Of a stretch of 64,000 nt of DNA, positions 22,464 to 49,369 are shown piece after piece. Position 1 is the stretch's first letter. Each line of letters begins with the position of its first letter. Location: the IMG/VR virus record IMGVR_UViG_3300049215_000771, positions 434,001-498,000 of that record. One strand, given 5' to 3'. Under the pieces are notes generated by a model. That model had not been told where the DNA came from. It searched no databases and saw only the letters and a program-made list of their open reading frames with translations. Position numbers and translations under genes: made by a program.

Positions 22464-23003
22464 ATGCTTGACGAATGGTTCAAATGCGCAGTGTGCGGAT
22501 CGAAAGAAGCACCCATCATGAGCATGGGGTACATTTCCCAATGCTATTGTCGAGATTGCGCCGACAACAAAAAAGAAGATTGCAACGCAGCCTTCAAGAA
22601 GGTCCACGACGAAGCTGTGCTTGAAGAAGCCTTTCGCCCCAAAATCAAACACGATGAAATTGACGTGAGAGATGATTACTTTCAGTACATCGTACAAAAC
22701 AAACAAGAACCAGAACTGGAGATGTGCTTCAGGAGAATTGCCGAGCAGGTGTACCTTCTAAAAACTACCACCAAGAAAGATTGGCATAACAACTGGCGCT
22801 GGATTCCTTTCATCGAAAACGTCGATAAAGGGACGTGGCAAGAAGTCCCCAAAGATTTTGTGGAGGCGGCGATCCCGTATTGTTACGACAGGTTGAAAAC
22901 ATACGATGCAGGCAGGGCCACAGCGAAAGATTACTTCACTGCGGCCTGCTGCGGTTTGTATGAGTATGCAAAACTGCACAACTGGCGAGATTGGGCGTAC
23001 TAA
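22464..23003 (+). CDS. Hypothetical protein with an N-terminal CxxC...CxxC
   Basis: CAVC...CRDC zinc-finger-like pattern. Confidence 0.5.
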   Translation: MLDEWFKCAVCGSKEAPIMSMGYISQCYCRDCADNKKEDCNAAFKKVHDEAVLEEAFRPKIKHDEIDVRDDYFQYIVQNKQEPELEMCFRRIAEQVYLLKTTTKKDWHNNWRWIPFIENVDKGTWQEVPKDFVEAAIPYCYDRLKTYDAGRATAKDYFTAACCGLYEYAKLHNWRDWAY

Positions 23004-24421
23004 TACAACTTCCGGTCTTCCGCCTCAAGAATCTTGCCCAAGTTGGGAAAGAAAATTTCCCACCACTCCGTCATCTCGTGCATGATGTCCTGGAGAGTGT
23101 CATAGATTGGGGTTTTCTTGCACTCCTCAATCCACTTGTCACAGTAGGTGTGCCAGAAGAAGTCCGTGAGGGTCTTCAAACCCAGCGGCCAGTTCAGGTC
23201 GTGTTCGATGTAGGTTTGTAATCTCCCAGCGGTCTTGATCCACTCCAGGTAGTATTCCTGGTTCTCTCCCCCAGGACAACCTGGCTCCCAATCCTCCAGC
23301 CCCCACTTCCCATTGCCGTGGATGAACCTGTAGGCATTGACCAGCTTGTTGAGCAGGGCTTTGCCTTTCTTCATGACGGCTTCATCACAGCGGGTGTCCG
23401 TGCCGACCTGGTTGCACGCCGCCCAATAACGAACACCCTCCATGCCGTACTTCTCAACGTAGACGTGCGGCTCGACGAAGTTGCCCGCCGTTTTGCTGAT
23501 CTTGTGGCCGTGCTTGTCCAGGGCGTGGCCGCTGATAATGATTTTCTTCCACGGAACCTGATCGCTGTGATAGAGACTTTTGACGATGGTGAAGAATGCC
23601 CACGTCCTGATGATGTCGTGCGCCTGGAACCTGGCGTCGAAGATCGGGGGATGAAGGGTAGGAATCTTCGTGTGTGCCGCCCACGTCATCTGCGGCGACA
23701 AGCTGGAAGTAAACCAGGTGTCAAAAACGATGTTGTCGGGTTCCCCCGGAATGTGGATGCCGTAGTTACGCTCACGGGAAATAGACCAATCCATCGTGAG
23801 GCCATCCAGCCAGCGATGCAGCCGCTCCTGAAAGACCTTGGGATGCCACTGGATCAGGTCGATAGCCTGCCTGAGACGGTCCAGGTGGTCACGGATGTTG
23901 ATGAACCAGCCCTCGCCTGTCCGTAGCTCGACTTTCTCACCAGAACGCTCGTAGCGGCCTTCCTCGTCGATCTCGGCCTGAGAAACGGAGACACGGGTTT
24001 TGGGGCACCAGAAATAGTCCCTGACGGCTTTGTAGGCGTAGCCCTTCTTGACCAGATCGTGGAACGACATCTCGGCCAAGGCGATGGCGTGGCGGTCATA
24101 GGTGTGGTAGTGATGCTTGCTCCAGCCCATGCCGATTTGTTGGAACAAGTCGGAGTACATCTTCGACGTATTCTCGGCAAACCTGACGATACCGGGCGTA
24201 TCGAAGATTTTGTCCTTCTGTGCCAACTTCTCGGTCGGCAGGCCGTTGCAATCAAAACAGAAAGGGTACAGAAGGGGGTCTTCCTTCTGGCCATCTTCGG
24301 TGAGATGGAAACGCTTGGCCCTGGCAACAAAGTCCATGTGGCAGTACGAGAAAACATGGCCCATATGCAACAGGCCAGAGATCGTCGGCGGCGGAACGTC
24401 GATAAGGTATTTTGGGTCCAT
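23000..24421 (-). CDS. valS: Valyl-tRNA synthetase-like, minimal (CP1 editing domain and C-terminal coiled coil absent)
   Basis: PPPTISGLLHMGH (HIGH), DCNGLPTE, DWSISR, QAHDIIRTW and KISKTAGN (KMSKS). Start MDPK at 24421. Confidence 0.85.
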   Translation of the reverse strand: MDPKYLIDVPPPTISGLLHMGHVFSYCHMDFVARAKRFHLTEDGQKEDPLLYPFCFDCNGLPTEKLAQKDKIFDTPGIVRFAENTSKMYSDLFQQIGMGWSKHHYHTYDRHAIALAEMSFHDLVKKGYAYKAVRDYFWCPKTRVSVSQAEIDEEGRYERSGEKVELRTGEGWFINIRDHLDRLRQAIDLIQWHPKVFQERLHRWLDGLTMDWSISRERNYGIHIPGEPDNIVFDTWFTSSLSPQMTWAAHTKIPTLHPPIFDARFQAHDIIRTWAFFTIVKSLYHSDQVPWKKIIISGHALDKHGHKISKTAGNFVEPHVYVEKYGMEGVRYWAACNQVGTDTRCDEAVMKKGKALLNKLVNAYRFIHGNGKWGLEDWEPGCPGGENQEYYLEWIKTAGRLQTYIEHDLNWPLGLKTLTDFFWHTYCDKWIEECKKTPIYDTLQDIMHEMTEWWEIFFPNLGKILEAEDRKLY

Positions 24422-24604
24422 GCCAGATGATACTACGATTTTGTGAGTTTGTAAGGTCGCAATTGTTTTTCGGTGAGCGGTATCCACGGCAAATCGGGAC
24501 GATTTTCCATGCACCCGCCACAAGGACGAGAAACGTCCTTGTGGCAGGGATGGACTCTATCTTCCGGGAGGAAACCCACGTCCTTGGCGTATCTCCAAGG
24601 ACAT

Positions 24605-25000
24605 TTACTGCATTGGCTCATTTTTCCCTCCCGTTTGATAGTGATGCCGATGTCCGTTTTTGCATCGGATGGAGGAAGTAATCGGCTTGTTGTAGACACG
24701 AAGTTCAATCTGTTGGTCGCAGCCTTCTTCCTTGCAAGGTACGGCGATCTTCTGTTGAACTACCAGGTCTTTGCCCAGGGCTTCACTGGACCAGTCGAGG
24801 CGATTCTTCTCTCCATCTTCAGATTCGTAAAGGGCCAGACCCCCTGCATGAATCGTTACTTCGATGTCTTCGGCACACACCTTGTAGTCCGTGAACTTGC
24901 TACGGTCCTTCTCGTCATAGACACGGAAGAAGTGTCGCTTCGTGAAAGGGTTGTAGAGAAAGAAACCACGGACACCTGTTGCGGACTTCTCATTCATCAT
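24605..25000 (-). CDS. Hypothetical protein
   Basis: ORF overlaps its neighbours in operon fashion. Confidence 0.5.
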   Translation of the reverse strand: MMNEKSATGVRGFFLYNPFTKRHFFRVYDEKDRSKFTDYKVCAEDIEVTIHAGGLALYESEDGEKNRLDWSSEALGKDLVVQQKIAVPCKEEGCDQQIELRVYNKPITSSIRCKNGHRHHYQTGGKNEPMQ

Positions 25001-25394
25001 TCACCCGCCTTTTATGAAGGCGTTCGATAAGGATGGGGTACTTGTCGGAAATGATGTCGAAAGCCAGAATGTAGTAGTACCCAGGTTTCAGGTTTCCAGC
25101 TTCTCGACGTTGCTCGAACACCTTGACGGAGCAGTAGTCCCGGCTCCTGTACTCGACGTAGTAGGCTTCCGGGTGTTTGCGCCGCCAAAGCATGGGTTGT
25201 GGGACACAGATATTGGCGAGATTCAGGTGTTTCTCCAGAAACTCCACCATCGGGCCTTTTTCGGTCATCACAACTCCGTTATAGCCATCAGCCAAAGGCA
25301 GGCCATTGGGAGTCATGAAGCGGACATTTTCTTCGGTCGGGTAGAGCGGCAGATGAAGTCGCTCCATATATCGAGTAGGCATTGTTGACTCCAA
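24990..25394 (-). CDS. Hypothetical protein
   Basis: ORF in the co-oriented run. Confidence 0.5.
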   Translation of the reverse strand: MESTMPTRYMERLHLPLYPTEENVRFMTPNGLPLADGYNGVVMTEKGPMVEFLEKHLNLANICVPQPMLWRRKHPEAYYVEYRSRDYCSVKVFEQRREAGNLKPGYYYILAFDIISDKYPILIERLHKRRVNDE

Positions 25395-25468: not shown

Positions 25469-25861
25469 ATGAATTTCCGTCAATTCCTTGAACATGAATT
25501 CCGCTTCCAGGGAGAAACTGTTGGTATCATTACGGCATATAACCCCAATGGTGAAACAATATCCTCCCGTGAGAACCGTAAACTGAATAAACGGCTCTGG
25601 AACGATCTGCGGGCCACTGGATATGACCCGTGGGCGATCAAAGGCAACTACAAAGGAGCCGCAGAACAGTCGTTCTTGGTTTCTGATATTTCTCGTGCGG
25701 ATTTGATCCGCCTGGCTAAGAAATACGACCAGGAGGCCGTCGTGTGGGGCAGGAAAACAGACAATGGCTATGACGTTGAATGGATTGAAGGCGAAGAAAC
25801 AACAAAACGTGACAAGGTGTCCAACATCAGGTCGTTAATTTCGCAGTCAACGAAATTCTGA
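25469..25861 (+). CDS. DUF3293-like protein with a capsid-targeting-like N-terminus
   Basis: IITAYNP..E...N...N..L pattern; starts MNFRQFLE. Confidence 0.6.
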   Translation: MNFRQFLEHEFRFQGETVGIITAYNPNGETISSRENRKLNKRLWNDLRATGYDPWAIKGNYKGAAEQSFLVSDISRADLIRLAKKYDQEAVVWGRKTDNGYDVEWIEGEETTKRDKVSNIRSLISQSTKF

Positions 25862-26435
25862 CCTCGTTGGCATCTGCCTTGCCCTTCAGTTCCTTCATCA
25901 CCTGGCCGACCAAGGAGTTGAGCGCCGCCTGTTTGCCCTTCTTGAAGTCGGCTACCGCTTTGGCGTTTCCTGCAATCACCTTGTCAACGGCATCGGCCAG
26001 TGCGTCCCCGCCCTCGCCAAAAAATCCGTCTCGGCAAATTACATCGAAAGCCGCCACGCCTTCCCAGCATTCCTCGAAAACATCTCGCACTTGCTTCGCA
26101 GAAAGTACGCCGTGGTGACGCAGAAACAACAGATATGCGATGTCTTCTTGGAGCCAGGGGCGATATTCTTTCACTTCTGCAATGGACTCGCCCGCTTCAT
26201 CCATCTTGACCTTGAACTCGTTCGTGAGAAACTTGGCGATAGAAACAGCAAACTGCGCTCGCTCCAGCTTCTCACGCACTGTGTCTATTATACCCAAATT
26301 GGTCAGTCCCCAAGGCCAGCAGGACATGAATTCACATAAAAAAGCAGCGGCATTCAGCCTTCCCTGGGGAGTCTTCAGGTCTTTCTGAAACTCGAACCAG
26401 TAGTGCCGAACGACGGCCAGTTCTTCGTTTGTCAT
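25827..26435 (-). CDS. GatB/YqeY C-terminal (tRNA-binding) domain protein
   Basis: VIAGNAKAVADFKKGKQAALNSLVGQVMKELKGKADAN matches the GatB C-terminus; the catalytic GatB N-terminal domain is absent. Confidence 0.85.
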   Translation of the reverse strand: MTNEELAVVRHYWFEFQKDLKTPQGRLNAAAFLCEFMSCWPWGLTNLGIIDTVREKLERAQFAVSIAKFLTNEFKVKMDEAGESIAEVKEYRPWLQEDIAYLLFLRHHGVLSAKQVRDVFEECWEGVAAFDVICRDGFFGEGGDALADAVDKVIAGNAKAVADFKKGKQAALNSLVGQVMKELKGKADANEVRISLTAKLTT

Positions 26436-27759: not shown

Positions 27760-27760
27760 G

Positions 27761-28072: not shown

Positions 28073-28558
28073 CTACGTCCCCTCAATCTCCCGAATGTAG
28101 TGGCGAGCCATTTCAATGCCGCTGGGGTTGGGAATCATTGCCGCCTTCTGTCCCAGGAGGCAGGCGGCGATGAGGGCCGCATCCAAAGGCGGAACCGCCG
28201 CAAAGGTCGGCCCAGGCCCGGTGATCCTCACCATGCTGATATGATACCGATGAGGCGTGCAGTAGGTATCTTTCGACATCTCCACCGAGATGATGCAGTG
28301 GTCATCACGGCGACGGTCGATCACCCGGCACAAACCAACCTCAACCTGCCACATGCCGTTTCGAGGGCATTTGTCGGGATTCTCCACCTGCCATCGACTG
28401 CGCTCCACTGCTTCGCATTCGGTGTTGGAGTACACCGGGCTTTCTTCAGCCGGGTACTTGTCCGCAGCTTCCCTCATCTCGACGCCCATCTGAATCATGG
28501 CGGCGATGGTGTAGGGAACGAAATCATCAGGACTTCGCTTCTTCGTTTCCATAGTCAT
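28073..28558 (-). CDS. Hypothetical protein
   Basis: Start trimmed to MTMETKK to limit overlap with thrS. Confidence 0.5.
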   Translation of the reverse strand: MTMETKKRSPDDFVPYTIAAMIQMGVEMREAADKYPAEESPVYSNTECEAVERSRWQVENPDKCPRNGMWQVEVGLCRVIDRRRDDHCIISVEMSKDTYCTPHRYHISMVRITGPGPTFAAVPPLDAALIAACLLGQKAAMIPNPSGIEMARHYIREIEGT

Positions 28559-29753
28559 ACCCGAAATCGAACTCGTTGAGGTAAGCTGCCTCGGCGAAGA
28601 AATCTCGCTTCGGCAAGGTCTTGTTAGTTCCGTCCCGCTCTCGAACAGTGACGGTTTCGGCTTCCACTTCCCGGTCCCCGATGATGAGCATTCGGGGGAT
28701 GTATTTCTCCTGAGCGATGGCAACCATCTGCGCCACCCGTTTGCCGGAAAGATCAACCATCGGACGAAGTTTCCAGTTCTCCAGCTTCACCTTCAGATCG
28801 AAACAGTAGCCCCTGGCCTTGTCAGTAACAGGCAGGATGGCGTACTGAATGGGGGCGAGCCACACAGGAAGGTGCCCCTGGTAGTGTTCGAGCAGGATGC
28901 CGATGAACCGCTCGAAGCTGCCATAAATGGCACGGTGTACAACCACAGGGGTTTTGCGGGCGTTGTCATGGTCAGTGTACTCCAAACCGAACCGAATGGG
29001 AAGCTGGAAATCCAACTGAATCGTTGCGGTCTGCCATTCCCGGCCTTGGCTGTCTTTCACGAAGAAGTCGATCTTGGGGCCGTAGAATGCCCCTCCACGG
29101 GGGTCTTCGGTGTAATTGGCGTAAGAACCCTGGAGCGAGGCCCGAAGATCGTCTTCAGCCTTGTCCCAGGTCGCCACTTCGCCCATGAAGTTCACCGGCC
29201 TGGTGGACAGCACGGCCCGGAGTTCCATGCCCAGCTTCCAATAGACACGCTGGACCATGACACAAAGCATGGTGATTTCTTTGTCGATTTGATCGGGAGC
29301 GAGGAAGATGTGAGCGTCGTCCTGGCAGAAGGAGCGACAGCGAGTGAGGCCGCTGAGAGCGCCGGAAACCTCGTCACGATGCAGAACACCTTGGTCGGCG
29401 ATGCGGAGGGGAAGTTCTTCGATGGAGCGAGCGCCTTTGGCCTTGTAGATTTCCATGTGGCCGGGGCAGTTCATTGGTTTCGGGATCAACAGGACATCTT
29501 CATCTTTGCCGTGGACCCCGAACATATTCTCTTTGTAGTGTTCCCAATGCCCGGAGATTTCGTACAACTCACGCTTCCACAGGATCGGAGTGCGTACTTC
29601 CTGGTAGTTCCATTGCTTCTGGATGGCCCGAATCTTGTCCTGGAGGATGGTGTAAACGATGTTGCCGTTGGGAAGCCAGATGGGGCAGCCGGGGGCCAGG
29701 TCGGAGAACATGAACAGGTCCATCTCACGACCGATTTCACGATGATCTTTCAT
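28527..29753 (-). CDS. thrS: Threonyl-tRNA synthetase lacking N1/N2 (editing) domains
   Basis: Begins at DHREIG; KPMNCPGH, HRDE.SGAL.GLTR.R.F.QDDAHIF, GGAFYGPKID, IHRA-type VVHRAIYGSFERF and an anticodon-binding domain. Confidence 0.95.
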   Translation of the reverse strand: MKDHREIGREMDLFMFSDLAPGCPIWLPNGNIVYTILQDKIRAIQKQWNYQEVRTPILWKRELYEISGHWEHYKENMFGVHGKDEDVLLIPKPMNCPGHMEIYKAKGARSIEELPLRIADQGVLHRDEVSGALSGLTRCRSFCQDDAHIFLAPDQIDKEITMLCVMVQRVYWKLGMELRAVLSTRPVNFMGEVATWDKAEDDLRASLQGSYANYTEDPRGGAFYGPKIDFFVKDSQGREWQTATIQLDFQLPIRFGLEYTDHDNARKTPVVVHRAIYGSFERFIGILLEHYQGHLPVWLAPIQYAILPVTDKARGYCFDLKVKLENWKLRPMVDLSGKRVAQMVAIAQEKYIPRMLIIGDREVEAETVTVRERDGTNKTLPKRDFFAEAAYLNEFDFGYDYGNEEAKS

Positions 29754-38877: not shown

Positions 38878-38882
38878 ACAAG

Positions 38883-38967: not shown

Positions 38968-39022
38968 AAAACCCCTGGTTGATTATGCCATAACATAAGA
39001 GCAATAGCCAGAGGACTGCAAG

Positions 39023-39111
39023 CGGAAGGTGAGAGAATCGAACTCTCGGCCCCCGTTAGGGGGCACCACCTTTCCAGGGTGGCGTGACGAACCAACAGTC
39101 ACCTACCTTCC
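39023..39111 (-). tRNA. tRNA-Ser(GGA)
   Basis: CCACC-CTGGAAA-GGTGG anticodon arm, long V arm, G73. Confidence 0.92.
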
Positions 39112-39406
39112 ATCGACCGTGAAGGGAACTGCTCTTATGGTAGTATAGATGCCGCCAATTTTTCCTTCAAGGCCAGAACCTCTGCCTCGGCGTCAGAATC
39201 CAGCAGTCCCTCCGCAAGATAGACATCGACAAAGACGAGAAGGTTCGCTTTTTCTTCGATAGAAAGTGGCTCATTTCTTTCCAGCTTATCACGCATATTC
39301 CAGGCCACCTTGCCCTGCCATCGGTCTTCAATGGCTGGGTAGGTGGCTTTGATGTAAGCGTAGCAAGCGTCAGCGAGGTATTCGACCTCTTGCGGCGTAA
39401 ACTCCA

Positions 39407-40051: not shown

Positions 40052-40431
40052 TGCTTGCCCGCCGCCACCCGTTGTGCAGACATCAGGATATTGTAGTTGC
40101 TCATGCGCTGCTGCGCTTCAGCATTCGCTGCCGCTCGATTCTGTGCCCGCTGGATATTGATGGCCTTGTGCGCCGCCCAGGTCTGCTGTTGAAGCATGAG
40201 TCGCTGATTGTAGTAATCGAGCGGCGTCATCAACGTCTTGGTCGGCAACGGAGTCGTGAGTGTCGAAGGCAGCGTCGGCAATGCCTTCATCAGATCGGCA
40301 CGGGTCGGCGCACATTGCGCCGTACATTTTCCGTTCTTGCAGGAGAAGGTCGGTGGTCCGCCGATCACCGGCGCTTGCCCGAAGGCAGTTGCGGAAAATA
40401 CCAACACGGCGAGCAAAGACAGAATTCTCAT
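40048..40431 (-). CDS. Secreted hypothetical protein
   Basis: Signal peptide MRILSLLAVLVFSATAFGQ. Confidence 0.6.
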   Translation of the reverse strand: MRILSLLAVLVFSATAFGQAPVIGGPPTFSCKNGKCTAQCAPTRADLMKALPTLPSTLTTPLPTKTLMTPLDYYNQRLMLQQQTWAAHKAINIQRAQNRAAANAEAQQRMSNYNILMSAQRVAAGKQ

Positions 40432-40955
40432 AGCTTCTTCCTCCGGTAATGGGAACGCTGGCGGTTTTCAAACGCCCAGCACTTGAACACTGTTTTCAGT
40501 TCTTCAGGTGAGGAAGCCCGGCGAAGCACGGTCCCGTCGATCATTTCTTCAGTCAAAACCGTAATCAGGATGGGAGGTTCGCCTTCTCTGTCATTCTCTC
40601 CAATGCAAAAAACAGCCCTACCAGATTGGTAGAACTCAAATTCCTCGCCCTCGGAGCGCTGCTCTTTCTTGAATGCTGCCAAGAACAACGGATCGACAAC
40701 CCTGGCCCCTGCTTCCTTGGCCTCCCGATACCGCTGAACAATTGAACGGTCGATGTACCTGGCCCCGATGTAAATGGCCTCTCGAATGTCCCGCTGAAGA
40801 TTGGCACAAGTCACACAACCTGGACACTTCCCCAGGTGTTCGTAACGCTTGGGATCAGCGATGCGCTCGATCCAGCGTTCACGAGCATGAGGCGTAATGA
40901 TGATAAGGTATGGCTTGCGAACAGGCACATCAGGGGTTGGAGGCTGCTCGTCCAT
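40428..40955 (-). CDS. Hypothetical protein with a T-x-HA-x-x-RW-x-x-R motif
   Basis: IITPHARERWIER; similar to 29819-30319. Confidence 0.55.
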   Translation of the reverse strand: MDEQPPTPDVPVRKPYLIIITPHARERWIERIADPKRYEHLGKCPGCVTCANLQRDIREAIYIGARYIDRSIVQRYREAKEAGARVVDPLFLAAFKKEQRSEGEEFEFYQSGRAVFCIGENDREGEPPILITVLTEEMIDGTVLRRASSPEELKTVFKCWAFENRQRSHYRRKKL

Positions 40956-40964
40956 ACCCCCATC

Positions 40965-41459
40965 TTACCCTGAAAAATCCTGGTTGTAAAGTCCCTTGCG
41001 AAGATACCACCGATTTGCTTCAAGGTACTGGAGGGTTCCGTTAAACTCCTCCTGCGGCACCCGGCTGAAATACTGGTTGATCCAGTTTTGCGCCTCGACG
41101 TTACTGGCCGGCATTGTCGGCACGGGAATGAAGTACAAGGTGATTGTGGTCGGGTTGCATAGCTCGAACAGTTCGCCTTCGGGAATCTCCTCGAACTGGT
41201 CGAGCAGCATCATGAAAGCACAACAAACTCGATGCTCCTCGTCGATGCCGATGAGAAACATCCCTTCCGGCCACTTATTGGGAGGAAGATACATCTGATG
41301 CGTTCGCATGTAGCGAACGCAATTCGCCATCCGACTCAGGGTCGGATCATCCTCGAAGAAACCTTCGTCACGTTTGAGTGGGTTGTCGGGATCGACGAGT
41401 TTGTGAATAGGAACAAGAATCGGCTTCAACGCTCCAAGTTCCCAATCAGGACTGTCCAT
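40965..41459 (-). CDS. Hypothetical protein
   Basis: Start trimmed to MDSPDW, immediately after the upstream stop codon. Confidence 0.5.
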   Translation of the reverse strand: MDSPDWELGALKPILVPIHKLVDPDNPLKRDEGFFEDDPTLSRMANCVRYMRTHQMYLPPNKWPEGMFLIGIDEEHRVCCAFMMLLDQFEEIPEGELFELCNPTTITLYFIPVPTMPASNVEAQNWINQYFSRVPQEEFNGTLQYLEANRWYLRKGLYNQDFSG

Positions 41460-41460
41460 G

Positions 41461-41757
41461 TTACCATCCAGCTTGATAGAAGTAGTGACATCCAGGACAC
41501 TGCATCCGTACAGGGTCGCCGGCCTCAACGAAATACGGTTCTTTCTTCTCAAGAACCGTGCCGCATCTCGGACAAAACGTACTTCTGGCAACTGGAAGGT
41601 CTTTGGTGCATTGCTCATTCATAAGCCGCTGACTTTCCAGCAAGACCGCCGTGGTTTGTCGGGACCACTTATCGGAGATGCCTTTCAGCAAGCCATGCTT
41701 ATTCCACCGTGCCTCCAGTTGTTTTGCTTCTTCGAGGAAACGATGATTCGGGTTCAT
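41461..41757 (-). CDS. Small protein: gp23-like capsid N-terminal segment fused to a zinc ribbon
   Basis: EARWNKHGLLKGISDKWSRQTTAVLLESQ resembles the T4-like MCP N-terminus (EKW..L....I....R..TA.LLENQ); then CPRC...CPGC. Confidence 0.6.
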   Translation of the reverse strand: MNPNHRFLEEAKQLEARWNKHGLLKGISDKWSRQTTAVLLESQRLMNEQCTKDLPVARSTFCPRCGTVLEKKEPYFVEAGDPVRMQCPGCHYFYQAGW

Positions 41758-42257
41758 TTCACTATCACCTTATTCCCATCAACAACGATCAACTTCTCAC
41801 CTTCGACGATCTCGATGGGTTTTTCTTTTTTCTTTTTTTCTGGTGGCGGGTCATCGGGGAACATCTTCTTGTAGACTTTGATGTACACAATGTACAAAGT
41901 CAACGAAATGATGAGGAAGTCCAAGAATGCTTTTATCAGGTGGCCTATCTCAACATTCATGCCGGCGACCGGATGGATCACCATATCCCGCCAGTTCCCA
42001 GCAGAAGCCCCTCCGTTGACAAAATAATTGACGACTGGCATCAGGGCGTAGTCGCAAATTGCAGTCACGACCTTGTTGAAAGCAGCCGCCATAATAAGAC
42101 CCACAGCGACTTGCATCATATCTTTGTTGAAAGCGAACTTCTTGTATTCCTCCAACTCCTTGCTTGGGTCAATGACTATCGGGCCGAGCATTTTCTGTGT
42201 TGCATTGCCCGGCTCAGGTGGTGTAGGTTGTGGAGGAAGCGGCGTCACGTTGTTCAT
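41754..42257 (-). CDS. mscL: Large-conductance mechanosensitive channel
   Basis: EYKKFAF...MQVAVGLIMAAAFNKVV...MP, G.LIKAFLDFLII; ATG lies just after the tRNA-Leu 3' end. Confidence 0.85.
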   Translation of the reverse strand: MNNVTPLPPQPTPPEPGNATQKMLGPIVIDPSKELEEYKKFAFNKDMMQVAVGLIMAAAFNKVVTAICDYALMPVVNYFVNGGASAGNWRDMVIHPVAGMNVEIGHLIKAFLDFLIISLTLYIVYIKVYKKMFPDDPPPEKKKKEKPIEIVEGEKLIVVDGNKVIVK

Positions 42258-42259
42258 AG

Positions 42260-42342
42260 TGGCCTGGGTGGGAGTCGAACCCACATGGTCTTGCGACCGG
42301 CAGATTTTGAGTCTGCTGCGTATACCGTTTCGCCACCAGGCC
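42260..42342 (-). tRNA. tRNA-Leu(CAA), long V arm
   Basis: GGCCTGG/CCAGGCC, A73, GCAGA-CTCAAAA-TCTGC. Confidence 0.93.
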
Positions 42343-43630
42343 AACCATCATGTGGTATTGTAGAATGACGACATGATGAGTCCAATCTGGATTGGTTTTG
42401 CGCCACCAGCCTTGGTAACTTCCAACCACGCCCGCTCGCACGCTGCGACTTCCACGGCATTGTCGGTCCAAGGTTCAAGCGGAACTTCCACTGTCATCTT
42501 CGTCCAGGTTCCGTCTTTCCACAGTAGGTACACTTCCACCTTCTTCATTTTTCTTCCTCAGTGTGACCTTCACCCCGCCGTAACTTAACGACATCTCGGA
42601 GATGAAGGGGAAGTCCGCCAAAATTCCCGACGCCTGTTTCATCACTTGCCTGACGATTTGCAGGTCGTCGGCTGGGTTCTCGCTCCCTTTCATGCAATTC
42701 TCCATCCAAATACGCCTTGAGGATCACCAGCACGTCAGCTTGTTTCATCCCCATTTCTTTGGCGACTTCTGCCAGAGCTACTTCGTGATCCCTCGGATAG
42801 AGCCTGGTTTTCAAGTAGATCAGAAACAACACTTGCCAGGGACGTTTTTCTTTACTGTACTCCCTTTTGAGAAAGAAATCCGTGCCCTGCTTGCCAGTAA
42901 TCTCCGGGAACCTGAAAACGAGCGGTTTTGGTTTTTCCTTCACCGGCTTTGCCTTCGGCATCCCTTTCTTGTAGTTTCTGATGTTCCTGTAAACTTCAGG
43001 CACAGGAACTTTCGCCATCTCAGCAACTTGTTCCGGCTTGTAGCCCAGGCGAAGATACAACAAACATTCGAGGAACTTGTTGCCTGGCTTTGCTTCGAGC
43101 AGCGTCCGAATCTCGGCAGCTTCGTGTTGCCATTCAACCTTGGGGGCGAGTTTTTTCTTTCTCCATCGCCAGCGCCATGTCATCGTGTAGTCCACCAGCG
43201 TTTGAGTCGTTGCCACCAGGTATGGTAAATGCGTTGATGATGCTGATGTTCCTTCATCCTTTCGAGGGCCAAAGTCTTGAACCCACAATCGACACACTGG
43301 TACTCAATGTCAAGTTCACTACCATCCAGAACTTGACCATCCTTCAGGCCAATGGTCGGGATCAGGATATTTGCCGCAGTCCTGGGCGGTATCTCGCCCA
43401 GGTTGTCGATATGAACGCTCATGTTCATGGTGGTTGATCCGGGTATACCCGGTCCAGTTCGTGTTCTTCTTCAATCAGCTTGTTCAACTTTCGGAAGTAG
43501 GCGATGGCGTCCTCAACATTGCCGGTCGTGGGGACTTTGAGCGCCACCCTGCGGTCGGCAAGGTCTTGCAATCGCCTCATCTTCTCGGCCTCGGTGATCT
43601 GGTTGGGCGGCGTGCCCAGCAGGATATTTC

Positions 43631-44236
43631 TCACTTCGGGGCCACCTTCCTGAACTCGGTAGCCAACTCATTGTAGATGGGTTGGTACTTGGTTTTGAAG
43701 TAAGCCCAATCATAATGCGGGTCGTTCAGGATGTCAAACCAGAATTGGTTCGCCGCCCCGAAATCCAAAATCTGCCCATGATCGGCGATTTGCTTGCCGA
43801 AGTTGAGTATTCTCAACGAGTGGAATAGGCTTTTCCAACCGATGTAGAAGTCTTTCTCAACCTCGATCTTCTTCTTCGCCTTCACGAAACTGTGAGACGC
43901 CTTCGCCGACAACTCGTTGCGAAGGCTGCCCAGGTTCAGCTTGAACTTGAATCGCTTCTTCACCTGACCGTCAGGATGGAAATATCCCTCCAGGGTGTGA
44001 ATCTTGTGCAGGTCCAGTTGTTGCTGCCAGTCCCGCTTGTTGTAAATGTGAATGTTCACATTGTCGTGGCGGAACTCAGTCCCGGTATCGGCACGACGAT
44101 TCTCAGGCACGATAGCCATGTAGTCGTAGTCCGACTTGTCGCTATGCGTACCATAAACCCGGCTGCCGTAGGGGACAAGAACCACATCCCTGTCCGACAG
44201 CCCGTAGGTCGCCTTGAAATAGTCAATGCCGTTCAT
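43631..44236 (-). CDS. Pol-beta-superfamily nucleotidyltransferase
   Basis: YGSRVYG...SDYDY (GS...DxD); start MNGID. Confidence 0.75.
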   Translation of the reverse strand: MNGIDYFKATYGLSDRDVVLVPYGSRVYGTHSDKSDYDYMAIVPENRRADTGTEFRHDNVNIHIYNKRDWQQQLDLHKIHTLEGYFHPDGQVKKRFKFKLNLGSLRNELSAKASHSFVKAKKKIEVEKDFYIGWKSLFHSLRILNFGKQIADHGQILDFGAANQFWFDILNDPHYDWAYFKTKYQPIYNELATEFRKVAPK

Positions 44237-45960
44237 GACATCACTGAGGGCAGGCCGGACTAATATGGTCGAACCACAACGGGGCCGGCTCACAATTCCC
44301 GATATTGACGAGACGCTGAACTGCACCGTCATCTTTGTGGATCGAAAAACTCACACCGCAAACCAGCGACATGGCTGTATACTCAATGCCAGTCGTATCC
44401 AGGTAAGCCTTCACACCTTTCTGTTGCTCGTCGGCGTGATCCTTGCGCCATTGTCTTTTGTCGTAAACGCCTGCGGGCACGTCATCCGGGTCGTCGAAAT
44501 GAAGGTACACGTCAAGCCGATCACCATCATCCTCGACATGCCTCCGCAGATGCGGCGTACACCGCTTTTCCTGGGCTGCCCATTCAGCAAGTGTCATGTT
44601 GGCCTCAGTTTCATCCTCGCCCGTAATGCCAGCCTGCTTTTCAGCAACGGGCTGTCCTGGCGAGTCTTCCTTTCGTCGTTATCGTCGATGCTCCTGTGTT
44701 GCTTCTCTCCGACAACCACCAAGTCATCGGGATTGTAACCATAACGAAGGTTACTCGGCTGCCACCGCACATCCACTTCCGGCCCCTGGAAGGTTCCGTA
44801 GTCCAGAAGCCCATCCACAACGCCGATGCAATCACCAAACTCTTCAATATGTTCAGCGCAACCATTGCCGATCATGGCCTGCTTGAGTTCTTCCGACATT
44901 CTTACTAGGGTGCCAGGTTTCATAGCTTCTCAATCTGCTTACAAAGGTCACGAAGGAACCTGTTCCTCCTGGCTTCGATTGCCTCCCGAAGCATCGACAC
45001 GAGTGCGCCGCCGTGATCCTGAACCGTCACCCGCCCCATCTCCCAGCCTCCCCTGGAGAGAATATGGAAGCTGTCGTCTACACTAAAAGACGCCTCAGCC
45101 CGCTCAAGGTTCAGATTAAAAACTTCCGGCTCGCCCCCGCTGGTGTGCCAGATGAAGCGGTCTTCGTTGGTTGCGTGGACCAACTCTTCGAGGATGACGG
45201 AAACTTTCTCGGTGTCAAGTAACGGCATCTTGCGTCTTCTCGTGCTTCAAGCAATGGTAGTGTTCCAGACCACGGGTCGGGAAAACGTAGTACCCACAGT
45301 GTTCCGTGAAGACAGCAATTTCTTCTCGCTGCTCGTCACGCACCAGGAAAGCGTAGTTGAAGAACATATTCGAGCCGTCCTCAAACTGGATCGACACGAA
45401 CGAATTGAACTGGCTCAGGTCGAACCAGTTGTTCTTCTTGATGTAGTCCTGCCAGTGTTTGGGCAAGTTGTTGAAAAACTTGTCAATGACGTTCATTTCT
45501 TCTTCCTGTATCGACCGTCGATCTCTTCTTCCCGGAACTCATCCACCACGTTTTTCTCGACGTGATGGAGTTTGTACCAGTGTTCCTTATGGATTCCAGT
45601 TGTGTAGCGACCGACGACCACGGCAATTGCGCCATTCCAGTAGTAGGGCGTCTGGCCGTCCTTGGATCGTCCCTTCAGGACACGAACTTTCTGACCTGGC
45701 TCGTACAAATAGGGTTTAGGGTCCGGGCGGTTGTATGCTTTCACCAACAGGTCCATGAAGGTGTCGCTCATACCTCAGTCAACTCCAATCCAAGGTCTTC
45801 ACACAACTCGCTGGCAGCCTCCATCGAGCGGTTGTAGACCGTTTTACCTTGCCGATCATTGATGAACAATTCACCGCCGTTGTAGTAGCCAGCAAGTCCA
45901 TGATCGGATTTCTTACAGGCTTCACGCAATTGTTTCAGCGCCAACATTATCTTCTCCTTG

Positions 45961-46041
45961 TGACCGGGGAGGGAGTCGAACCCTCACGCCTTTCGGCACA
46001 GCGTTCTAAGCGCTGCGTGGCTGCCATTACACCACCCGGCC
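45961..46041 (-). tRNA. tRNA-Leu(TAG)
   Basis: CAGCG-CTTAGAA-CGCTG, V arm, A73. Confidence 0.92.
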
Positions 46042-46938: not shown

Positions 46939-48141
46939 TCATTTCTTCAACACCACCGAAGAACCATCGCTCCGATCCCGAATCTCACAACCCAGGTCGA
47001 TGATCCTTCTTTTCAGGGCATCGGCCCCAGCCCAATTTCGCTGCCGCCTGCATTCCTCTCGGAGTTTGGCAAGCTGGATGGCGTCGTCGGGAGCATCCTC
47101 ATCCGAGAACATCTGGAAACCGAGTAATTCGGCTTGCTCCAGGCTGGGATTCACGAAAGTCGCTGCGATGGCTTCCGAAGTATTCAGGTTGGCGTCCATC
47201 GCCTTGGCGAAATCTTCCGAAACTCCATGTTCTGGTGCCGACTTCAGCCGATTCCTCAAAGCCTTCCACTGTTGCGCCGAAGTCCCATCCAACAACCCTT
47301 CAACGGATAAAGGTTTGGCATAACTGGCCGAGAGAATCCAGAAGCGAATCACGTTGGGGTCCGTGCCATTCGCCCGATAGTCCCGGATGTTGACGGCGTT
47401 CCCCTCGGATTTTCCCATCCTCCTGTCGCCGATCTGAACCATCCCATTGTGGAGCCAGATGTCCGCCAAGGGCGATCCGGCATGAAGGCATTCGGACTGA
47501 GCGATCTCATTCTCGTGATGCGGAAACTTCAAATCGTCGCCGCCCACATGAATATCCACCGTGAACCCAATGGTCCTTTCAATCATGATGGAGCATTCAA
47601 GATGCCAACCAGGTCGCCCCTTGGGGAATTCAGACTCATTGGCCTTCGGCCCCTTCCACAAAACGAAATCTTCCGCCGTTTTCCGACGTGAAAGTTTCCC
47701 ATATCCAGGGAACGTCTTCGTTTTGAAGCGAATGTCGCCATCTTTGTGGTAAGCATGGCCACTTTCGACAAGCGCCGTAGCTGCAACCTTCATCGGGATC
47801 ATGTAGTCCGTCACACGGGGGTACAAGTCCGCCTTCTGGACGTTCAGCCAGCCCATGTCATTGAAATAGTCGTCGATGAAGCGGTCAGCCAGTTCTTTGC
47901 TGGTCACGCCCTCCTTTGCCGCCCGATCCACGATTTTGTCGTCCACGTCCGTAAAATTCTGAACGTGGTAGACCTTCTGCCGGCGTTTGAGCCAGCGTTT
48001 CAGCACGTCCCACACAACATAGCTCCTGGCGTGTCCCAGGTGGCAGTAGTCGTAGACCGTTACACCACAAGCGTACATAGTGATCGGGCGGTCACTAGGG
48101 ACTTCTTTTTCACGCCGGGTTAGGGAGTCGTGCAGTTTCAT
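46939..48141 (-). CDS. cysS: Cysteinyl-tRNA synthetase (compact)
   Basis: YACGVTVYDYCHLGHARS, NFTDVDDKI, GRPGWHLECS, FPHHENE and MGKSEGN motifs; start MKLHD at 48141. Confidence 0.95.
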   Translation of the reverse strand: MKLHDSLTRREKEVPSDRPITMYACGVTVYDYCHLGHARSYVVWDVLKRWLKRRQKVYHVQNFTDVDDKIVDRAAKEGVTSKELADRFIDDYFNDMGWLNVQKADLYPRVTDYMIPMKVAATALVESGHAYHKDGDIRFKTKTFPGYGKLSRRKTAEDFVLWKGPKANESEFPKGRPGWHLECSIMIERTIGFTVDIHVGGDDLKFPHHENEIAQSECLHAGSPLADIWLHNGMVQIGDRRMGKSEGNAVNIRDYRANGTDPNVIRFWILSASYAKPLSVEGLLDGTSAQQWKALRNRLKSAPEHGVSEDFAKAMDANLNTSEAIAATFVNPSLEQAELLGFQMFSDEDAPDDAIQLAKLREECRRQRNWAGADALKRRIIDLGCEIRDRSDGSSVVLKK

Positions 48142-48177
48142 GCGCCCATAGTACCCCGATTTAGAAGAAGTGTAAAG

Positions 48178-48256
48178 TAGCCTCGGTGGGAGTCGAACCC
48201 ACATCCTTTCGGCACCGGGTTTAAGCCGGCTGCGTATACCGTTCCGCCACGAGGCC
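48178..48256 (-). tRNA. tRNA-Leu(TAA)
   Basis: GCCGG-CTTAAAC-CCGGT, V arm, A73. Confidence 0.9.
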
Positions 48257-48301
48257 ATTCAACCAAATCGGTTGAAAGTTGGTGTTTTCAACCGATTTGG
48301 T

Positions 48302-49369
48302 TTATCTAATCTCGACCTTCAATTCCTTCATCCGGTCACGAAGCTGTTGCTGACGGGCGTTGATTTCCTCGTTCGTCAGCACCCGATCCATCGACCTGTA
48401 GGTGATGCGGTAGCAATGAGATTCCCGCTCACCTTTTTTGAAAGAATCCAGCAGCTTGACACTTTCAACCAGATCGCCGTGTAGATCACGAACAATCTGG
48501 TAGAAATCGTTCTCGCTGTAGCCAGCCGGAATCCAGAACGCCATGTCTTTGACACACGGCGGCTGGACCGAGAATGGCTTGAATTTAGAGTCCAGGTCTT
48601 TGAACTGGTTGAGGAAGCGTTCGTCCTCACTCCAGAACAATCGGATGTCCGGGATGTCGAAAACAAGCATTGCCAGCCGCTCCAGGCCAACACCGAACGC
48701 CCAGCCCTGGGTGTAGTCACTGTAGTTGTCACCAAGAGGCCCAAGGGCTTCACAGCGCTTGATAACATCGGGATGGACGATGCCACAACCCGCTACTTCC
48801 AGCCACTCGCCATTCCATTCGATCTCCAACTCCCAAGAAGGGTTCGTGAACGGGAAGTAGGAGTCCACGAATCTGTAGTTCAACTGCCGGTTATGTGGGC
48901 TGTACGGGATGTTGAGAACTCGTTCTATCATGTCGAACATATGTTCCTTCAACATCCTCTCAAGGTCCAATGTCTGATATTTCGCCTTGTGAAAAAGGCC
49001 CACGCCTTCAACCTGGTGGAACACCGGGTAATGCGTGCGATCAATGGTGTCTCGCCGGTACACGTCGCCACAGACCAGGAACTTCATGTGTCCCTTGTTG
49101 ATGAGCATGTGCTGATGGGCGCTGGTATGCGTCCTCAGAACGTGCTTCTCGTCAACGTAGTAGGTGTCAGAAGGCCGGCGAGAGGGATGGTCGGGTGGAA
49201 TCAGCAGATGGTCGAAGTTATCTTCCACTGTCACCACCGGCCCGAACGTCTCGTAGATTTCGTGGCCGGGGAAGGCCATATAGATAGCCTTCTTGACAAT
49301 TTCGAGCGGGTGTCGTTCCTTCAGATGGAGGTTACGCCCCATTTTTTCTTTGATGCTCGGCGGGATCAT
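48302..49369 (-). CDS. pheS: Monomeric (mitochondrial-type) phenylalanyl-tRNA synthetase
   Basis: HPSR..SDTYY, LRTHTSAHQ, YRRD.ID.THYPVFHQ, YFPFTNPS and GWAFGVGLERL motifs, fused to a C-terminal FDX-ACB (KDMAFW...SHCYRITYRS..R.LTNEEIN). Confidence 0.93.
   Translation of the reverse strand: MIPPSIKEKMGRNLHLKERHPLEIVKKAIYMAFPGHEIYETFGPVVTVEDNFDHLLIPPDHPSRRPSDTYYVDEKHVLRTHTSAHQHMLINKGHMKFLVCGDVYRRDTIDRTHYPVFHQVEGVGLFHKAKYQTLDLERMLKEHMFDMIERVLNIPYSPHNRQLNYRFVDSYFPFTNPSWELEIEWNGEWLEVAGCGIVHPDVIKRCEALGPLGDNYSDYTQGWAFGVGLERLAMLVFDIPDIRLFWSEDERFLNQFKDLDSKFKPFSVQPPCVKDMAFWIPAGYSENDFYQIVRDLHGDLVESVKLLDSFKKGERESHCYRITYRSMDRVLTNEEINARQQQLRDRMKELKVEIR

What the first reader, a model, noticed from the sequence alone, without database searches (positions are those of the whole stretch)
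23000..49369. A systematic set of stripped-down, editing-less synthetases
ValRS lacks CP1, ThrRS starts at the catalytic core (no N2 editing domain) and PheRS is the monomeric form with no beta-subunit editing site. AspRS lacks GAD and CysRS is compact. All three enzymes here that normally proofread have lost that module while keeping their catalytic motifs. Inference: a speed-over-fidelity charging system, deliberate mistranslation, or reliance on trans-editing.
Basis: partly seen in the sequence, partly recalled or inferred. Interest (0 to 1): 0.78.

Follow-up and report, generated by a model that had tools for sequence, protein, structure and literature searches.

The report
Domain-stripped tRNA synthetases of a huge phage
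A giant bacteriophage from a moss metagenome carries its own tRNA-charging enzymes in cut-down forms, several without their proofreading modules, and these short forms are conserved across many huge phages, so they appear to be working enzymes of a kind not yet described in the papers I could search.

Summary
The window belongs to a 532.7-kb phage record with 56 tRNAs and 15 synthetase or synthetase-like genes.

- ValRS (473 aa) has the roughly 200-aa CP1 editing domain replaced by about 11 residues, and its C-terminal domains are gone.
- ThrRS (408 aa) equals E. coli residues 242-614, so it has no N1 or N2 domain.
- PheRS (355 aa) is the mitochondrial-type monomer.
- AspRS is bacterial-type with the 123-aa GAD insert excised. 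It lies at 16169-17644, outside the stated range.
- CysRS is only mildly short, and CysRS never has an editing domain.

Each short form belongs to a large family of equally short proteins. Many sit on 0.2-0.67 Mb contigs, which I take to be huge phages. These are therefore not artefacts or pseudogenes. No known editing domain was found in the record, and none of the two families tested was found in two complete relatives.

The same genome keeps a full IleRS with an intact-looking CP1. Non-editing modules are stripped as well (GAD, the SerRS arm, the ValRS C-terminus). The pattern is general domain economy with selective retention, not a programme of mistranslation. Proofreading is probably dispensable or supplied by the host; this was not tested.

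Side finding: the phage monomeric PheRS family is the sister group of eukaryotic organellar PheRS.

The parts
16169..17644 (-). AspRS, bacterial type, with the GAD insertion excised (491 aa from Met64 of the ORF 16169-17833)
   Evidence: NF001750 scores 522.7 bits against a cut-off of 443. Pfam finds tRNA_anti-codon and tRNA-synt_2 but no GAD. Against 4o2d, 123 residues (309-432) are replaced by 5.
23000..24421 (-). Compact ValRS (473 aa): Rossmann core, SC fold and helical bundle; no CP1 editing domain and no C-terminal stem-binding or coiled-coil domains
   Evidence: It is ValRS by profile (NF009687 at 355 bits against IleRS at 159) and by tree (clade with full-length ValRS, SH-aLRT 98). CP1 is replaced by about 11 residues.
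25827..26435 (-). Stand-alone GatB/YqeY-domain protein (202 aa), a possible trans-acting tRNA-binding helper (inference only)
   Evidence: PF02637 at 5.7e-23. It matches only the C-terminal part of the GatB models. It is not syntenic with ValRS in relatives.
28527..29753 (-). Compact ThrRS (408 aa): catalytic plus anticodon-binding domains only; no TGS (N1) and no N2 editing domain
   Evidence: It equals E. coli ThrRS 242-614. Zn ligands C96, H148 and H273 are invariant in the family.
38882..46041 (-). tRNA genes Ser(tga) 38882-38967, Ser(gga) 39022-39111, Leu(caa) 42259-42342 and Leu(tag) 45960-46041, interspersed with small ORFs
   Evidence: ARAGORN. Rfam confirms the two Leu genes.
46939..48141 (-). 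CysRS (about 400 aa), mildly compact; a family that never has an editing domain
   Evidence: PF01406 at 7e-91. TIGR00435 scores 335.6 bits against a cut-off of 340, covering model positions 1-365/466. PDB alignment.
48177..48256 (-). tRNA-Leu(taa) between CysRS and PheRS
48302..49369 (-). Monomeric, mitochondrial-type PheRS (355 aa): alpha-like catalytic domain fused to the FDX-ACB anticodon-binding domain; no beta subunit in the genome
50208..63080 (-). Further tRNA genes: Leu(gag) 50208-50291, Tyr 53629-53713, Leu(caa) 54213-54289, Leu(cag) 57173-57256, Leu(gag) 57827-57903, Phe(gaa) 61698-61772, Ser(cga) 62625-62713, Ser(gct) 62991-63080
   Evidence: ARAGORN. Rfam confirms most and adds 55679-55755 and 60726-60791.

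Best explanation
The window is part of the translation-gene island of a huge bacteriophage. The record held is 532.7 kb, and its proteins also occur on a 673-kb contig. It comes from a moss metagenome and is related to the 635-kb 'uncultured phage' LR745206.

The phage encodes 56 tRNAs and 15 synthetases or synthetase-like proteins. Most have been reduced to the parts needed to activate an amino acid and hold the tRNA, namely the catalytic core plus an anticodon-binding module. ValRS lost CP1 and its C-terminal domains. ThrRS lost N1 and N2. PheRS is a one-chain enzyme without the editing beta subunit. AspRS lost GAD.

Proposed working (inferred): these minimal enzymes add charging capacity for phage and host tRNAs during infection. 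Post-transfer proofreading for Val, Thr, Phe (and Ala) is not phage-encoded. It is either dispensable over a short lytic cycle or supplied in trans by the host's full-length synthetases and free editing factors. CP1 is kept only in IleRS.

Shown: the domain architectures, family conservation, intact motifs, and the absence of known editing domains in the DNA held. Inferred: tRNA charging activity, error rates and the host contribution.
For: - Architecture.
- Genome inventory of 15 synthetase or synthetase-like genes and 56 tRNAs.
- The short forms are conserved families, not accidents. For ValRS, the best 120 clusters at 43-100% identity are nearly all 423-492 aa. Many sit on 500-673 kb contigs, and HIGH, KMSKS and even the CP1-replacing linker are conserved. 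For ThrRS, about 60 clusters of 385-411 aa lack tRNA_SAD and rank ahead of full-length bacterial ThrRS at about 49% identity. Their Zn ligands and class II motifs are invariant.
- Relatives: all five related IMG/VR records carry the compact ValRS. Three also carry a CP1-less LeuRS-like protein of 424-427 aa. IleRS keeps CP1 in the two where it was found.
- ValRS sits in a conserved neighbourhood in relatives.
- No editing factor was found.
- The phage tRNAs carry canonical identity marks (A73 in tRNA-Val, G3:U70 in tRNA-Ala, G1-C72/A73 in tRNA-Phe) and no encoded CCA. There is a CysRS and a LysRS but no tRNA-Cys or tRNA-Lys, so host tRNAs must be usable.
- The sequence is confirmed in independent DNA runs of other samples. 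A metatranscriptome holds five small 100%-identical contigs in 23000-28999, a weak hint of expression.
- Precedents show that such enzymes work. M. mobile LeuRS lacks CP1, and a nonapeptide linker can replace CP1 in E. coli LeuRS (PMC3643597). Yeast mitochondrial ThrRS lacks the editing domain, charges tRNA, and forms Ser-tRNAThr in vitro (PMC4267643). Human mitochondrial PheRS charges bacterial tRNAPhe (PMC4394434).
Against: - There is no biochemical evidence that any of these proteins charges tRNA or how accurately.
- The most reduced genes elsewhere in the genome may not be synthetases at all: SerRS core 334 aa, HisRS-like 205 aa, GlyRS-like 270 aa, AlaRS-like 332 aa.
- About 140 kb of the original 673-kb contig is not in the record and could not be reached.
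- In relatives only tRNA_SAD and YbaK were searched.
- The host is unknown, so host trans-editing is an assumption.
- Retention of CP1 in IleRS shows that the phage does care about fidelity in at least one case. This sits awkwardly with 'editing is dispensable'.
- The RNA-library contigs may be DNA carry-over.
Confidence: 0.6

Rival explanations
1. Fidelity is retained without editing domains. The compact enzymes have unusually selective synthetic sites or use pre-transfer editing in the synthetic site. Loss of the modules then costs little accuracy.
For: Yeast mitochondrial ThrRS without an editing domain has tRNA-dependent pre-transfer editing in the aminoacylation site (PMC4267643). The phage ThrRS keeps the zinc site that excludes Val. 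The compact families are old and conserved, which gives time for the pocket to tighten.
Against: In the same paper, pre-transfer editing did not prevent Ser-tRNAThr formation in vitro. No pocket change that would exclude Thr from ValRS or Ser from ThrRS could be identified from sequence. IleRS keeps CP1, which suggests the lineage did not find a general substitute.
Confidence: 0.15
2. The proteins serve something other than bulk translation. They might supply aminoacyl-tRNA or aminoacyl-adenylate for another pathway, keep tRNAs charged to shield them from host anti-phage tRNA-targeting toxins, or resist host or competitor inhibitors of synthetases.
For: Phage enzymes that use charged tRNA outside translation exist, for example Mu Mom using Gly-tRNAGly on DNA (PMC13219725). 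Several synthetase-like genes in this genome lack any tRNA-binding module. NCBIfam has a 'PheS-related mystery ligase SrmL' family that the PheRS hits at 244 bits, below its cut-off of 300.
Against: The four enzymes of the finding keep anticodon-binding domains. They sit among tRNA genes. PheRS scores higher on pheS_mito (386 bits, above cut-off) than on SrmL. No partner enzyme was seen next to them.
Confidence: 0.1
3. Deliberate mistranslation. The phage gains from a statistical proteome or from corrupting host proteins, and selection removed the editing modules for that purpose.
For: Editing is missing in four of five proofreading-type families, and no trans-editing gene was found. Natural editing loss with measurable mistranslation is reported for Mycoplasma (cited in PMC3643597).
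Against: IleRS keeps an intact-looking CP1 here and in relatives. Non-editing domains are removed just as often. The phage's own large proteome, about 700 ORFs, would suffer from the errors. Nothing in the sequence distinguishes purpose from tolerance.
Confidence: 0.07
4. Artefact or decay: truncated ORFs from mis-assembly, frameshifts or pseudogenisation.
For: One related contig (L009) shows the homologous genes broken into several pieces.
Against: The same lengths recur in more than 100 clusters from many samples and sources. The deletion junctions are conserved. The ValRS model folds with pLDDT 91. An independent sample's contigs match with no differences.
Confidence: 0.02

Closest known systems
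Mycoplasma mobile LeuRS, naturally lacking CP1 (PDB 3ziu), and the editing-defective LeuRS/ThrRS/PheRS set of Mycoplasma
   Same: It is a class Ia synthetase in which CP1 is replaced by a short peptide linker yet aminoacylation persists. Several proofreading-type enzymes are affected in one genome. The compact ValRS model matches 3ziu at TM 0.77 (PMC3643597).
   Different: Here the enzyme is ValRS. I know of no natural CP1-less ValRS and found none described in the papers searched. It has also lost the C-terminal domains. The carrier is a phage with the host's enzymes alongside, not a reduced cellular genome where the enzyme is the only copy.
Mitochondrial minimalist synthetases: monomeric mt-PheRS (FARS2, PDB 3cmq/5mgu) and yeast mt-ThrRS (MST1, PDB 3ugq)
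   Same: PheRS has the same two-domain one-chain architecture, about 50% identity to organellar enzymes, and scores above the TIGR00469 cut-off. ThrRS has the same catalytic plus anticodon-binding layout.
   Different: It is encoded by a bacteriophage and has no transit peptide. The phage ThrRS is closer to bacterial and cytosolic ThrRS cores (E about 1e-97) than to yeast mt-ThrRS (9e-83), so it is an independent truncation.
E. coli delta-N ThrRS (residues 242-642, PDB 1evk/1evl), a laboratory truncation
   Same: The boundaries are almost exactly the same: query 2-376 matches 1-373 of 1evk.
   Different: It is natural and conserved as a family. From my own knowledge, not checked here, the laboratory construct is reported to mischarge Ser.
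Synthetases of huge phages (Al-Shayeb et al. 2020, PMC7162821), e.g. LR745206.1
   Same: Same kind of genome: up to 15 synthetases and dozens of tRNAs. LR745206 carries a 43%-identical compact ValRS.
   Different: The text I could read of that paper treats the synthetases as an inventory with trees and does not mention lost domains.
'Valyl-tRNA synthetase' of cultured Stenotrophomonas jumbo phages RAS14 and CM1 (OP752703, OP883945)
   Same: It is 449 aa. ValRS profiles match in two stretches (model about 10-178 and 440-679 of 860), so it too lacks CP1.
   Different: It is only 25% identical to the window's enzyme. It is closest to a different ValRS model (NF004349 rather than NF009687), so it may be an independent loss. 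It is annotated without comment.

Membership tests
Valine-tRNA ligase (class Ia) | HIGH and KMSKS signature motifs in a Rossmann-fold core | tested here: met
   HMGH and KISKT are present and invariant or near-invariant across 22 family members. PF00133 scores 2e-44.
Valine-tRNA ligase (class Ia) | Closer to ValRS than to IleRS, LeuRS or MetRS by profile and by tree | tested here: met
   NF009687 ValRS scores 355 bits, against IleRS 159, LeuRS 91 and MetRS 73. It forms a clade with full-length ValRS at SH-aLRT 98, apart from phage IleRS and compact LeuRS.
Valine-tRNA ligase (class Ia) | Score above the curated whole-protein cut-off of a ValRS model | tested here: not met
   355 bits against a cut-off of 738. 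This is expected, because about half of the model has no counterpart.
Valine-tRNA ligase (class Ia) | CP1 post-transfer editing domain | tested here: not met
   About 200 residues are replaced by about 11. The model is MetRS-sized.
Valine-tRNA ligase (class Ia) | C-terminal anticodon-stem-binding and coiled-coil domains | tested here: not met
   The alignment to 1gax stops near residue 654 of 862. TMt is only 0.46. There is no Anticodon_1 hit for the window's protein, though some family members have one.
Valine-tRNA ligase (class Ia) | Valylation of tRNA-Val | not testable with these tools
   The complex prediction with phage tRNA-Val was not folded by the tool.
Threonine-tRNA ligase | Class II core with the zinc site, plus the HGTP anticodon-binding domain, above the curated cut-off | tested here: met
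   TIGR00418 scores 452.7 against 383.65. PF00587 and PF03129 both hit. C96, H148 and H273 are invariant.
Threonine-tRNA ligase | N-terminal TGS (N1) and N2 editing domain (tRNA_SAD) | tested here: not met
   The protein starts at the equivalent of E. coli residue 242. There is no PF07973 match anywhere in the record.
Monomeric (mitochondrial-type) PheRS, TIGR00469 | Alpha-like catalytic domain and FDX-ACB domain in one chain, above the curated cut-off | tested here: met
   385.7 bits against 258.35. PF01409 and PF03147 both hit. Human mt-PheRS matches at 9e-94.
Monomeric (mitochondrial-type) PheRS, TIGR00469 | No beta subunit or B3_4 editing module | tested here: met
   PF03483 is absent from the record.
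Monomeric (mitochondrial-type) PheRS, TIGR00469 | Nuclear-encoded organellar enzyme of eukaryotes | tested here: not met
   It is encoded on a virus record. Phage-type sequences form their own clade beside the eukaryotic one. Full-length monomeric hits occur in only 2-3 of 185,579 prokaryote species genomes, on contigs that are likely phage.
Bacterial-type AspRS | OB-fold anticodon domain plus class IIb core above the curated cut-off | tested here: met
   NF001750 scores 522.7 against 443. PF01336 and PF00152 both hit.
Bacterial-type AspRS | GAD insertion domain | tested here: not met
   123 residues of 4o2d (309-432) correspond to 5 residues here.
Naturally editing-deficient translation systems (Mycoplasma, mitochondria, microsporidia) | Editing modules missing or dead in several synthetases of one genetic system | tested here: met
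   Val, Thr, Phe and the Ala-like gene lack them. IleRS is the exception.
Naturally editing-deficient translation systems (Mycoplasma, mitochondria, microsporidia) | Measured mischarging or mistranslation | not testable with these tools
   This needs enzyme assays and proteomics.

The most novel reading that the evidence does not exclude
The one-chain PheRS of mitochondria and plastids shares its origin with this huge-phage family. The enzyme may have been invented in, or passed through, large phages and then been acquired by early eukaryotes for their organelles, as is accepted for the phage-type mitochondrial RNA polymerase.

Evidence so far:
- Phage and organellar enzymes are about 50% identical, against 33-38% to bacterial PheS alpha.
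- Together they form one clade with SH-aLRT 100.
- Within it, a phage-type clade and a eukaryote clade are sisters with support of about 90.
- The type is essentially absent from 185,579 prokaryote species genomes.

The direction of transfer is unresolved.
Probability: 0.25. Interest if true: 0.85.

Novelty: new variant of a known kind. Interest (0 to 1): 0.62.

Why it matters
Proofreading by ValRS, ThrRS and PheRS is usually regarded as important for cells. Known natural losses come from reduced genomes such as Mycoplasma, mitochondria and microsporidia.

This work points to a large, conserved, environmentally widespread set of natural minimal synthetases in huge phages:
- a CP1-less ValRS, for which I found no described natural precedent;
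- a CP1-less LeuRS-like protein in relatives;
- a natural equivalent of the laboratory delta-N ThrRS;
- a bacterial AspRS without GAD.

These are ready-made test cases for three questions. What do the accessory domains contribute? How much error can a virus tolerate? Can host enzymes proofread for a parasite's synthetases? They may also interest people who design small orthogonal synthetases.

A CP1-less ValRS is present in cultured Stenotrophomonas jumbo phages, so the questions are experimentally tractable. The sister relationship between phage and organellar monomeric PheRS bears on how the organellar enzyme arose.

Tried and rejected
- Looked for phage-encoded trans-editing factors with Pfam models PF07973, PF04073, PF02580, PF03483 and PF08915, and with the phage's own CP1 as a query. 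Nothing was found. The best match was a 12-bit, E = 0.07 YbaK-like hit at genome 179339-179467, which I dismissed.
- Tried to reach the roughly 140 kb of the 673-kb contig that the 532.7-kb record lacks. The protein look-up returned only Logan and ENA contigs. An exact-match scan of metagenome contigs with the record's last 30 bases found nothing.
- Complex prediction of compact ValRS with phage tRNA-Val: the tool did not fold it, so it is not evidence either way.
- Stop-codon recoding as an explanation for short ORFs was rejected. Coding density is 0.90 under the standard code.
- MetRS identity for the 473-aa protein, which its fold resembles most closely in overall shape, was rejected on profile scores and the tree.
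- Looked for T-box or other regulatory RNAs near the synthetase genes. Only tRNAs were found.
- Pfam scan of ten further ORFs in the region for hidden editing or tRNA-related domains. It found only HNH endonucleases, a nucleotidyltransferase-like hit and a small membrane protein.
- Five literature searches for a prior description of domain-stripped phage synthetases or a phage monomeric PheRS. None was found. The library does not cover subscription-only papers.

Full report
**What the window is.** The 64-kb window is positions 434001-498000 of a 532,729-bp virus record, which IMG/VR labels 'provirus' and CheckV rates 100% complete. GC is 0.53. Under the standard genetic code the coding density is 0.90, with about 700 ORFs. 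The record has 56 tRNA genes. The window's compact ValRS protein is also recorded on a 673,178-bp contig, so about 140 kb of the original contig is not held. Near-identical DNA occurs in moss-metagenome runs. The closest GenBank phage is LR745206.1, a 634,780-bp uncultured phage. Its size matches the largest genomes described by Al-Shayeb et al. 2020 (PMC7162821). That paper reports up to 15 synthetases per huge phage.

**The observation.** All four architectural claims hold.
- *ValRS* (23000-24421, minus strand, 473 aa). Aligned to IleRS 8c9e, residues 37-188, 200-259 and 265-404 match 48-202, 405-463 and 522-657. The roughly 200-residue CP1 domain is replaced by about 11 residues, and a second 59-residue insert by about 5. 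Alignment to T. thermophilus ValRS stops near residue 654 of 862, so the C-terminal stem-binding and coiled-coil domains are also missing. An AlphaFold model built on 22 family members has pLDDT 91. It superposes on 500-aa MetRS structures over nearly their whole length (TM 0.78/0.74). It covers less than half of ValRS 1gax (TMq 0.82, TMt 0.46). It also matches the naturally CP1-less LeuRS of Mycoplasma mobile.
- *The ValRS assignment.* The protein is ValRS rather than MetRS or IleRS. ValRS profiles score 355 bits, against IleRS 159, LeuRS 91 and MetRS 73. In a tree it joins full-length ValRS (SH-aLRT 98), apart from the phage's own IleRS and from compact LeuRS-like proteins.
- *ThrRS* (28527-29753, 408 aa). 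It matches E. coli ThrRS residues 242-614 and model positions 171-549 of TIGR00418, above the curated cut-off. It has the HGTP anticodon-binding domain but no TGS or tRNA_SAD.
- *PheRS* (48302-49369, 355 aa). It carries the catalytic and FDX-ACB domains in one chain, passes the pheS_mito cut-off, and matches human mitochondrial PheRS at 9e-94.
- *AspRS*. It is bacterial-type with the 123-residue GAD insert reduced to 5 residues. It lies at 16169-17644, outside the coordinates given.
- *CysRS* (46939-48141). It is about 60 residues shorter than solved CysRS. This is a minor point, since CysRS has no editing domain.

**Are these real, working genes?** Each short form is a family.
- The best 120 clusters for ValRS (43-100% identity) are nearly all 423-492 aa. 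Many lie on contigs of 0.5-0.67 Mb.
- HIGH, KMSKS and the short linker that replaces CP1 are all conserved.
- For ThrRS, about 60 clusters of 385-411 aa without tRNA_SAD precede the first full-length bacterial ThrRS, which is about 49% identical. The zinc ligands and class II motifs are invariant.
- Five related IMG/VR records, two of them complete with terminal repeats, all carry the compact ValRS. In several of them it sits in the same neighbourhood.
- Contigs from another sample match the window without differences. A metatranscriptome contains five short identical contigs in 23000-28999, which is a weak hint of expression at most.
- Artefact and pseudogene readings can be set aside.

**The wider genome changes the interpretation.** The record encodes 15 synthetases or synthetase-like proteins.
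- Full or nearly full in length: IleRS (922 aa), MetRS (585), LysRS (517), TyrRS (390) and GluRS.
- Reduced: ValRS, ThrRS, AspRS, PheRS, a SerRS core without the N-terminal arm (334 aa), a HisRS-like core (205 aa), a GlyRS-like core (270 aa), an AlaRS-like core (332 aa, with no editing or C-terminal domain) and a divergent ArgRS-like protein (431 aa).
- No LeuRS or ProRS is present.
- IleRS has CP1, with the TTTPWT and GHGEDD signatures.
- In relatives, IleRS also spans the CP1 region, while a LeuRS-like protein of 424-427 aa lacks it.

So four of the five proofreading-type families lack their editing module, but one keeps it. Modules unrelated to editing are removed at least as often. The pattern is domain economy with selective retention, not targeted abolition of proofreading.

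**Trans-editing.** Searches of the whole record for tRNA_SAD (AlaX and ThrRS editing), YbaK/ProX, D-Tyr deacylase, the PheT B3_4 domain, the archaeal ThrRS editing domain and a free CP1 found nothing. tRNA_SAD and YbaK are also absent from the five relatives. Ten further ORFs in the region have no relevant domain. The caveats are the missing 140 kb, which I could not reach, and possible unrecognised folds.

**How it most likely works.** The four enzymes keep the catalytic and anticodon-binding parts and sit among tRNA genes. The phage tRNAs carry canonical identity elements and lack an encoded CCA. There is a CysRS and a LysRS but no tRNA-Cys or tRNA-Lys, so host tRNAs must also be substrates.

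Published precedents show that such minimal enzymes charge tRNA:
- CP1-less M. mobile LeuRS, whose linker can replace CP1 in the E. coli enzyme (PMC3643597);
- yeast mitochondrial ThrRS, which nevertheless forms Ser-tRNAThr in vitro (PMC4267643);
- human mitochondrial PheRS, which accepts bacterial tRNAPhe (PMC4394434).

I therefore favour, at about 0.6, an auxiliary charging system made of minimal enzymes. Its errors would be tolerated over a short infection or corrected by the host's own full-length synthetases and free editing factors. The charging activity, the error rates and the host contribution are all inferences. The rivals are intrinsic selectivity or pre-transfer editing (0.15), a non-translational use (0.1), adaptive mistranslation (0.07) and artefact (0.02).

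**Comparison with what is known.** Phage-encoded synthetases are known, and so are natural editing-less synthetases. The following appear to be new as far as five full-text searches could show. The huge-phage and jumbo-phage papers I read also do not mention them.
- A natural CP1-less ValRS family.
- A CP1-less LeuRS-like family in phages.
- A natural delta-N ThrRS family in phages.
- A bacterial-type AspRS without GAD.

A 449-aa protein annotated as 'valyl-tRNA synthetase' in the cultured Stenotrophomonas jumbo phage RAS14 also lacks CP1. It is only 25% identical to the window's enzyme and is closest to a different ValRS model, so the loss may have happened more than once. That phage offers a laboratory system.

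**Side finding on PheRS.**
- The phage enzyme's relatives are equally short metagenomic proteins, several on contigs of 0.16-0.52 Mb, and eukaryotic organellar PheRS at about 50% identity.
- A scan of one genome for each of 185,579 prokaryote species found full-length monomeric matches on only two or three contigs, which are probably mis-binned phage. Otherwise it found ordinary PheS alpha at 33-38% identity.
- In a tree rooted on bacterial PheS alpha, the monomeric enzymes form one clade (SH-aLRT 100).
- That clade holds a phage-type clade and a eukaryote clade, each with support of about 90, plus a few unresolved basal sequences.
- The two groups are sisters. Who gave the gene to whom is not resolved. 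Most metagenomic rows in the tree are unlabelled, and only a few of the 'phage' rows were verified as virus records.

**Verdict.** This is a new variant of known kinds, of good interest to synthetase and phage specialists, and it is testable.

Noticed in passing
window 48302-49369 (-); loci L027, L031, L032: The phage monomeric PheRS family is the sister group of eukaryotic mitochondrial and plastid PheRS (about 50% identity). It is nearly absent from prokaryote genomes. The direction of transfer is unresolved.
   Followed up: partly
window 38882-63080 (-) versus genome positions 145-55586: The window's tRNA genes are almost all long-variable-arm types (Ser, Leu, Tyr) plus one Phe, all on the minus strand. 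The short-arm tRNAs (Gly, Pro, Ala, Val, Arg, Thr and others) cluster at the other end of the record. There are 8 tRNA-Leu genes but no LeuRS, and the SerRS-like gene lacks the arm that normally reads the long variable arm.
   Followed up: no
window 57736-57826 (-); genome 121393-121540 and 80837-80930: ARAGORN calls three tRNAs with a CUA anticodon and one with UCA, which would be suppressor-like. Yet the genome reads well in the standard code (density 0.90). The window's CUA call is not confirmed by Rfam.
   Followed up: partly
window 55679-55755 (-) and 60726-60791 (-): Rfam finds two more tRNA-like genes that ARAGORN did not call. Conversely, the four Ser tRNAs and one Leu(caa) called by ARAGORN do not reach the Rfam gathering score.
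   Followed up: no
window 25827-26435 (-): A stand-alone GatB/YqeY-domain protein (202 aa) lies between ValRS and ThrRS. This domain helps tRNA binding when fused to some GlnRS (NCBIfam NF011291). It might act as a helper for enzymes that lost tRNA-binding parts. It is not adjacent to ValRS in relatives.
   Followed up: partly
loci L111, L112, L115 (records G003, G005, G001): Related huge phages encode a 424-427-aa LeuRS-like protein. TIGR00396 scores 380-418 bits, and the first stretch matches model positions 30-221 of 843. It therefore appears to lack CP1. This genome has no counterpart.
   Followed up: partly
genome 30065-31063, 46690-47694, 60043-60660, 499480-500292 (outside the window): These are core-only AlaRS-like (332 aa), SerRS-like (334 aa), HisRS-like (205 aa) and GlyRS-like (270 aa) genes without recognisable tRNA-binding domains. 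Whether they are synthetases at all is open.
   Followed up: partly
window 33632-34288 (-) and 46027-46473 (-): HNH endonuclease-like ORFs are interspersed among the synthetase and tRNA genes.
   Followed up: no
window 26432-27031, 31594-32502, 34781-35572, 35955-37100 (all -): 2OG-Fe(II) oxygenase, family-90 glycosyltransferase, formyltransferase and glutathionylspermidine-synthase-like genes sit between the synthetases. The last has a strong match, PF03738 at 2e-145. Their roles are unknown.
   Followed up: no
window 46939-48258 (-): The longest CysRS ORF runs 39 codons upstream into tRNA-Leu(taa) at 48177-48256. The real start is probably the Met at 48141.
   Followed up: yes
window 13336-15492 (+): A 718-aa glycine-rich protein has two near-repeated halves and is probably a fibre-like structural protein.
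   Followed up: no
whole record: IMG/VR labels the record a 532.7-kb 'provirus', but the same protein is on a 673-kb contig and relatives are 635-670 kb. The record starts in a tRNA array. The trimming may have cut off true phage DNA.
   Followed up: partly
locus L009 (IMGVR_UViG_3300045125_000119): In this 146-kb relative the homologues of ValRS, the RecD-like helicase, the formyltransferase and the GSP synthase are each split into several ORFs. This indicates either a poor assembly or a decaying copy.
   Followed up: no
locus L117 (OP752703.1, Stenotrophomonas phage RAS14): A cultured 320-kb jumbo phage has a 449-aa CP1-less ValRS annotated simply as valyl-tRNA synthetase.
   Followed up: partly
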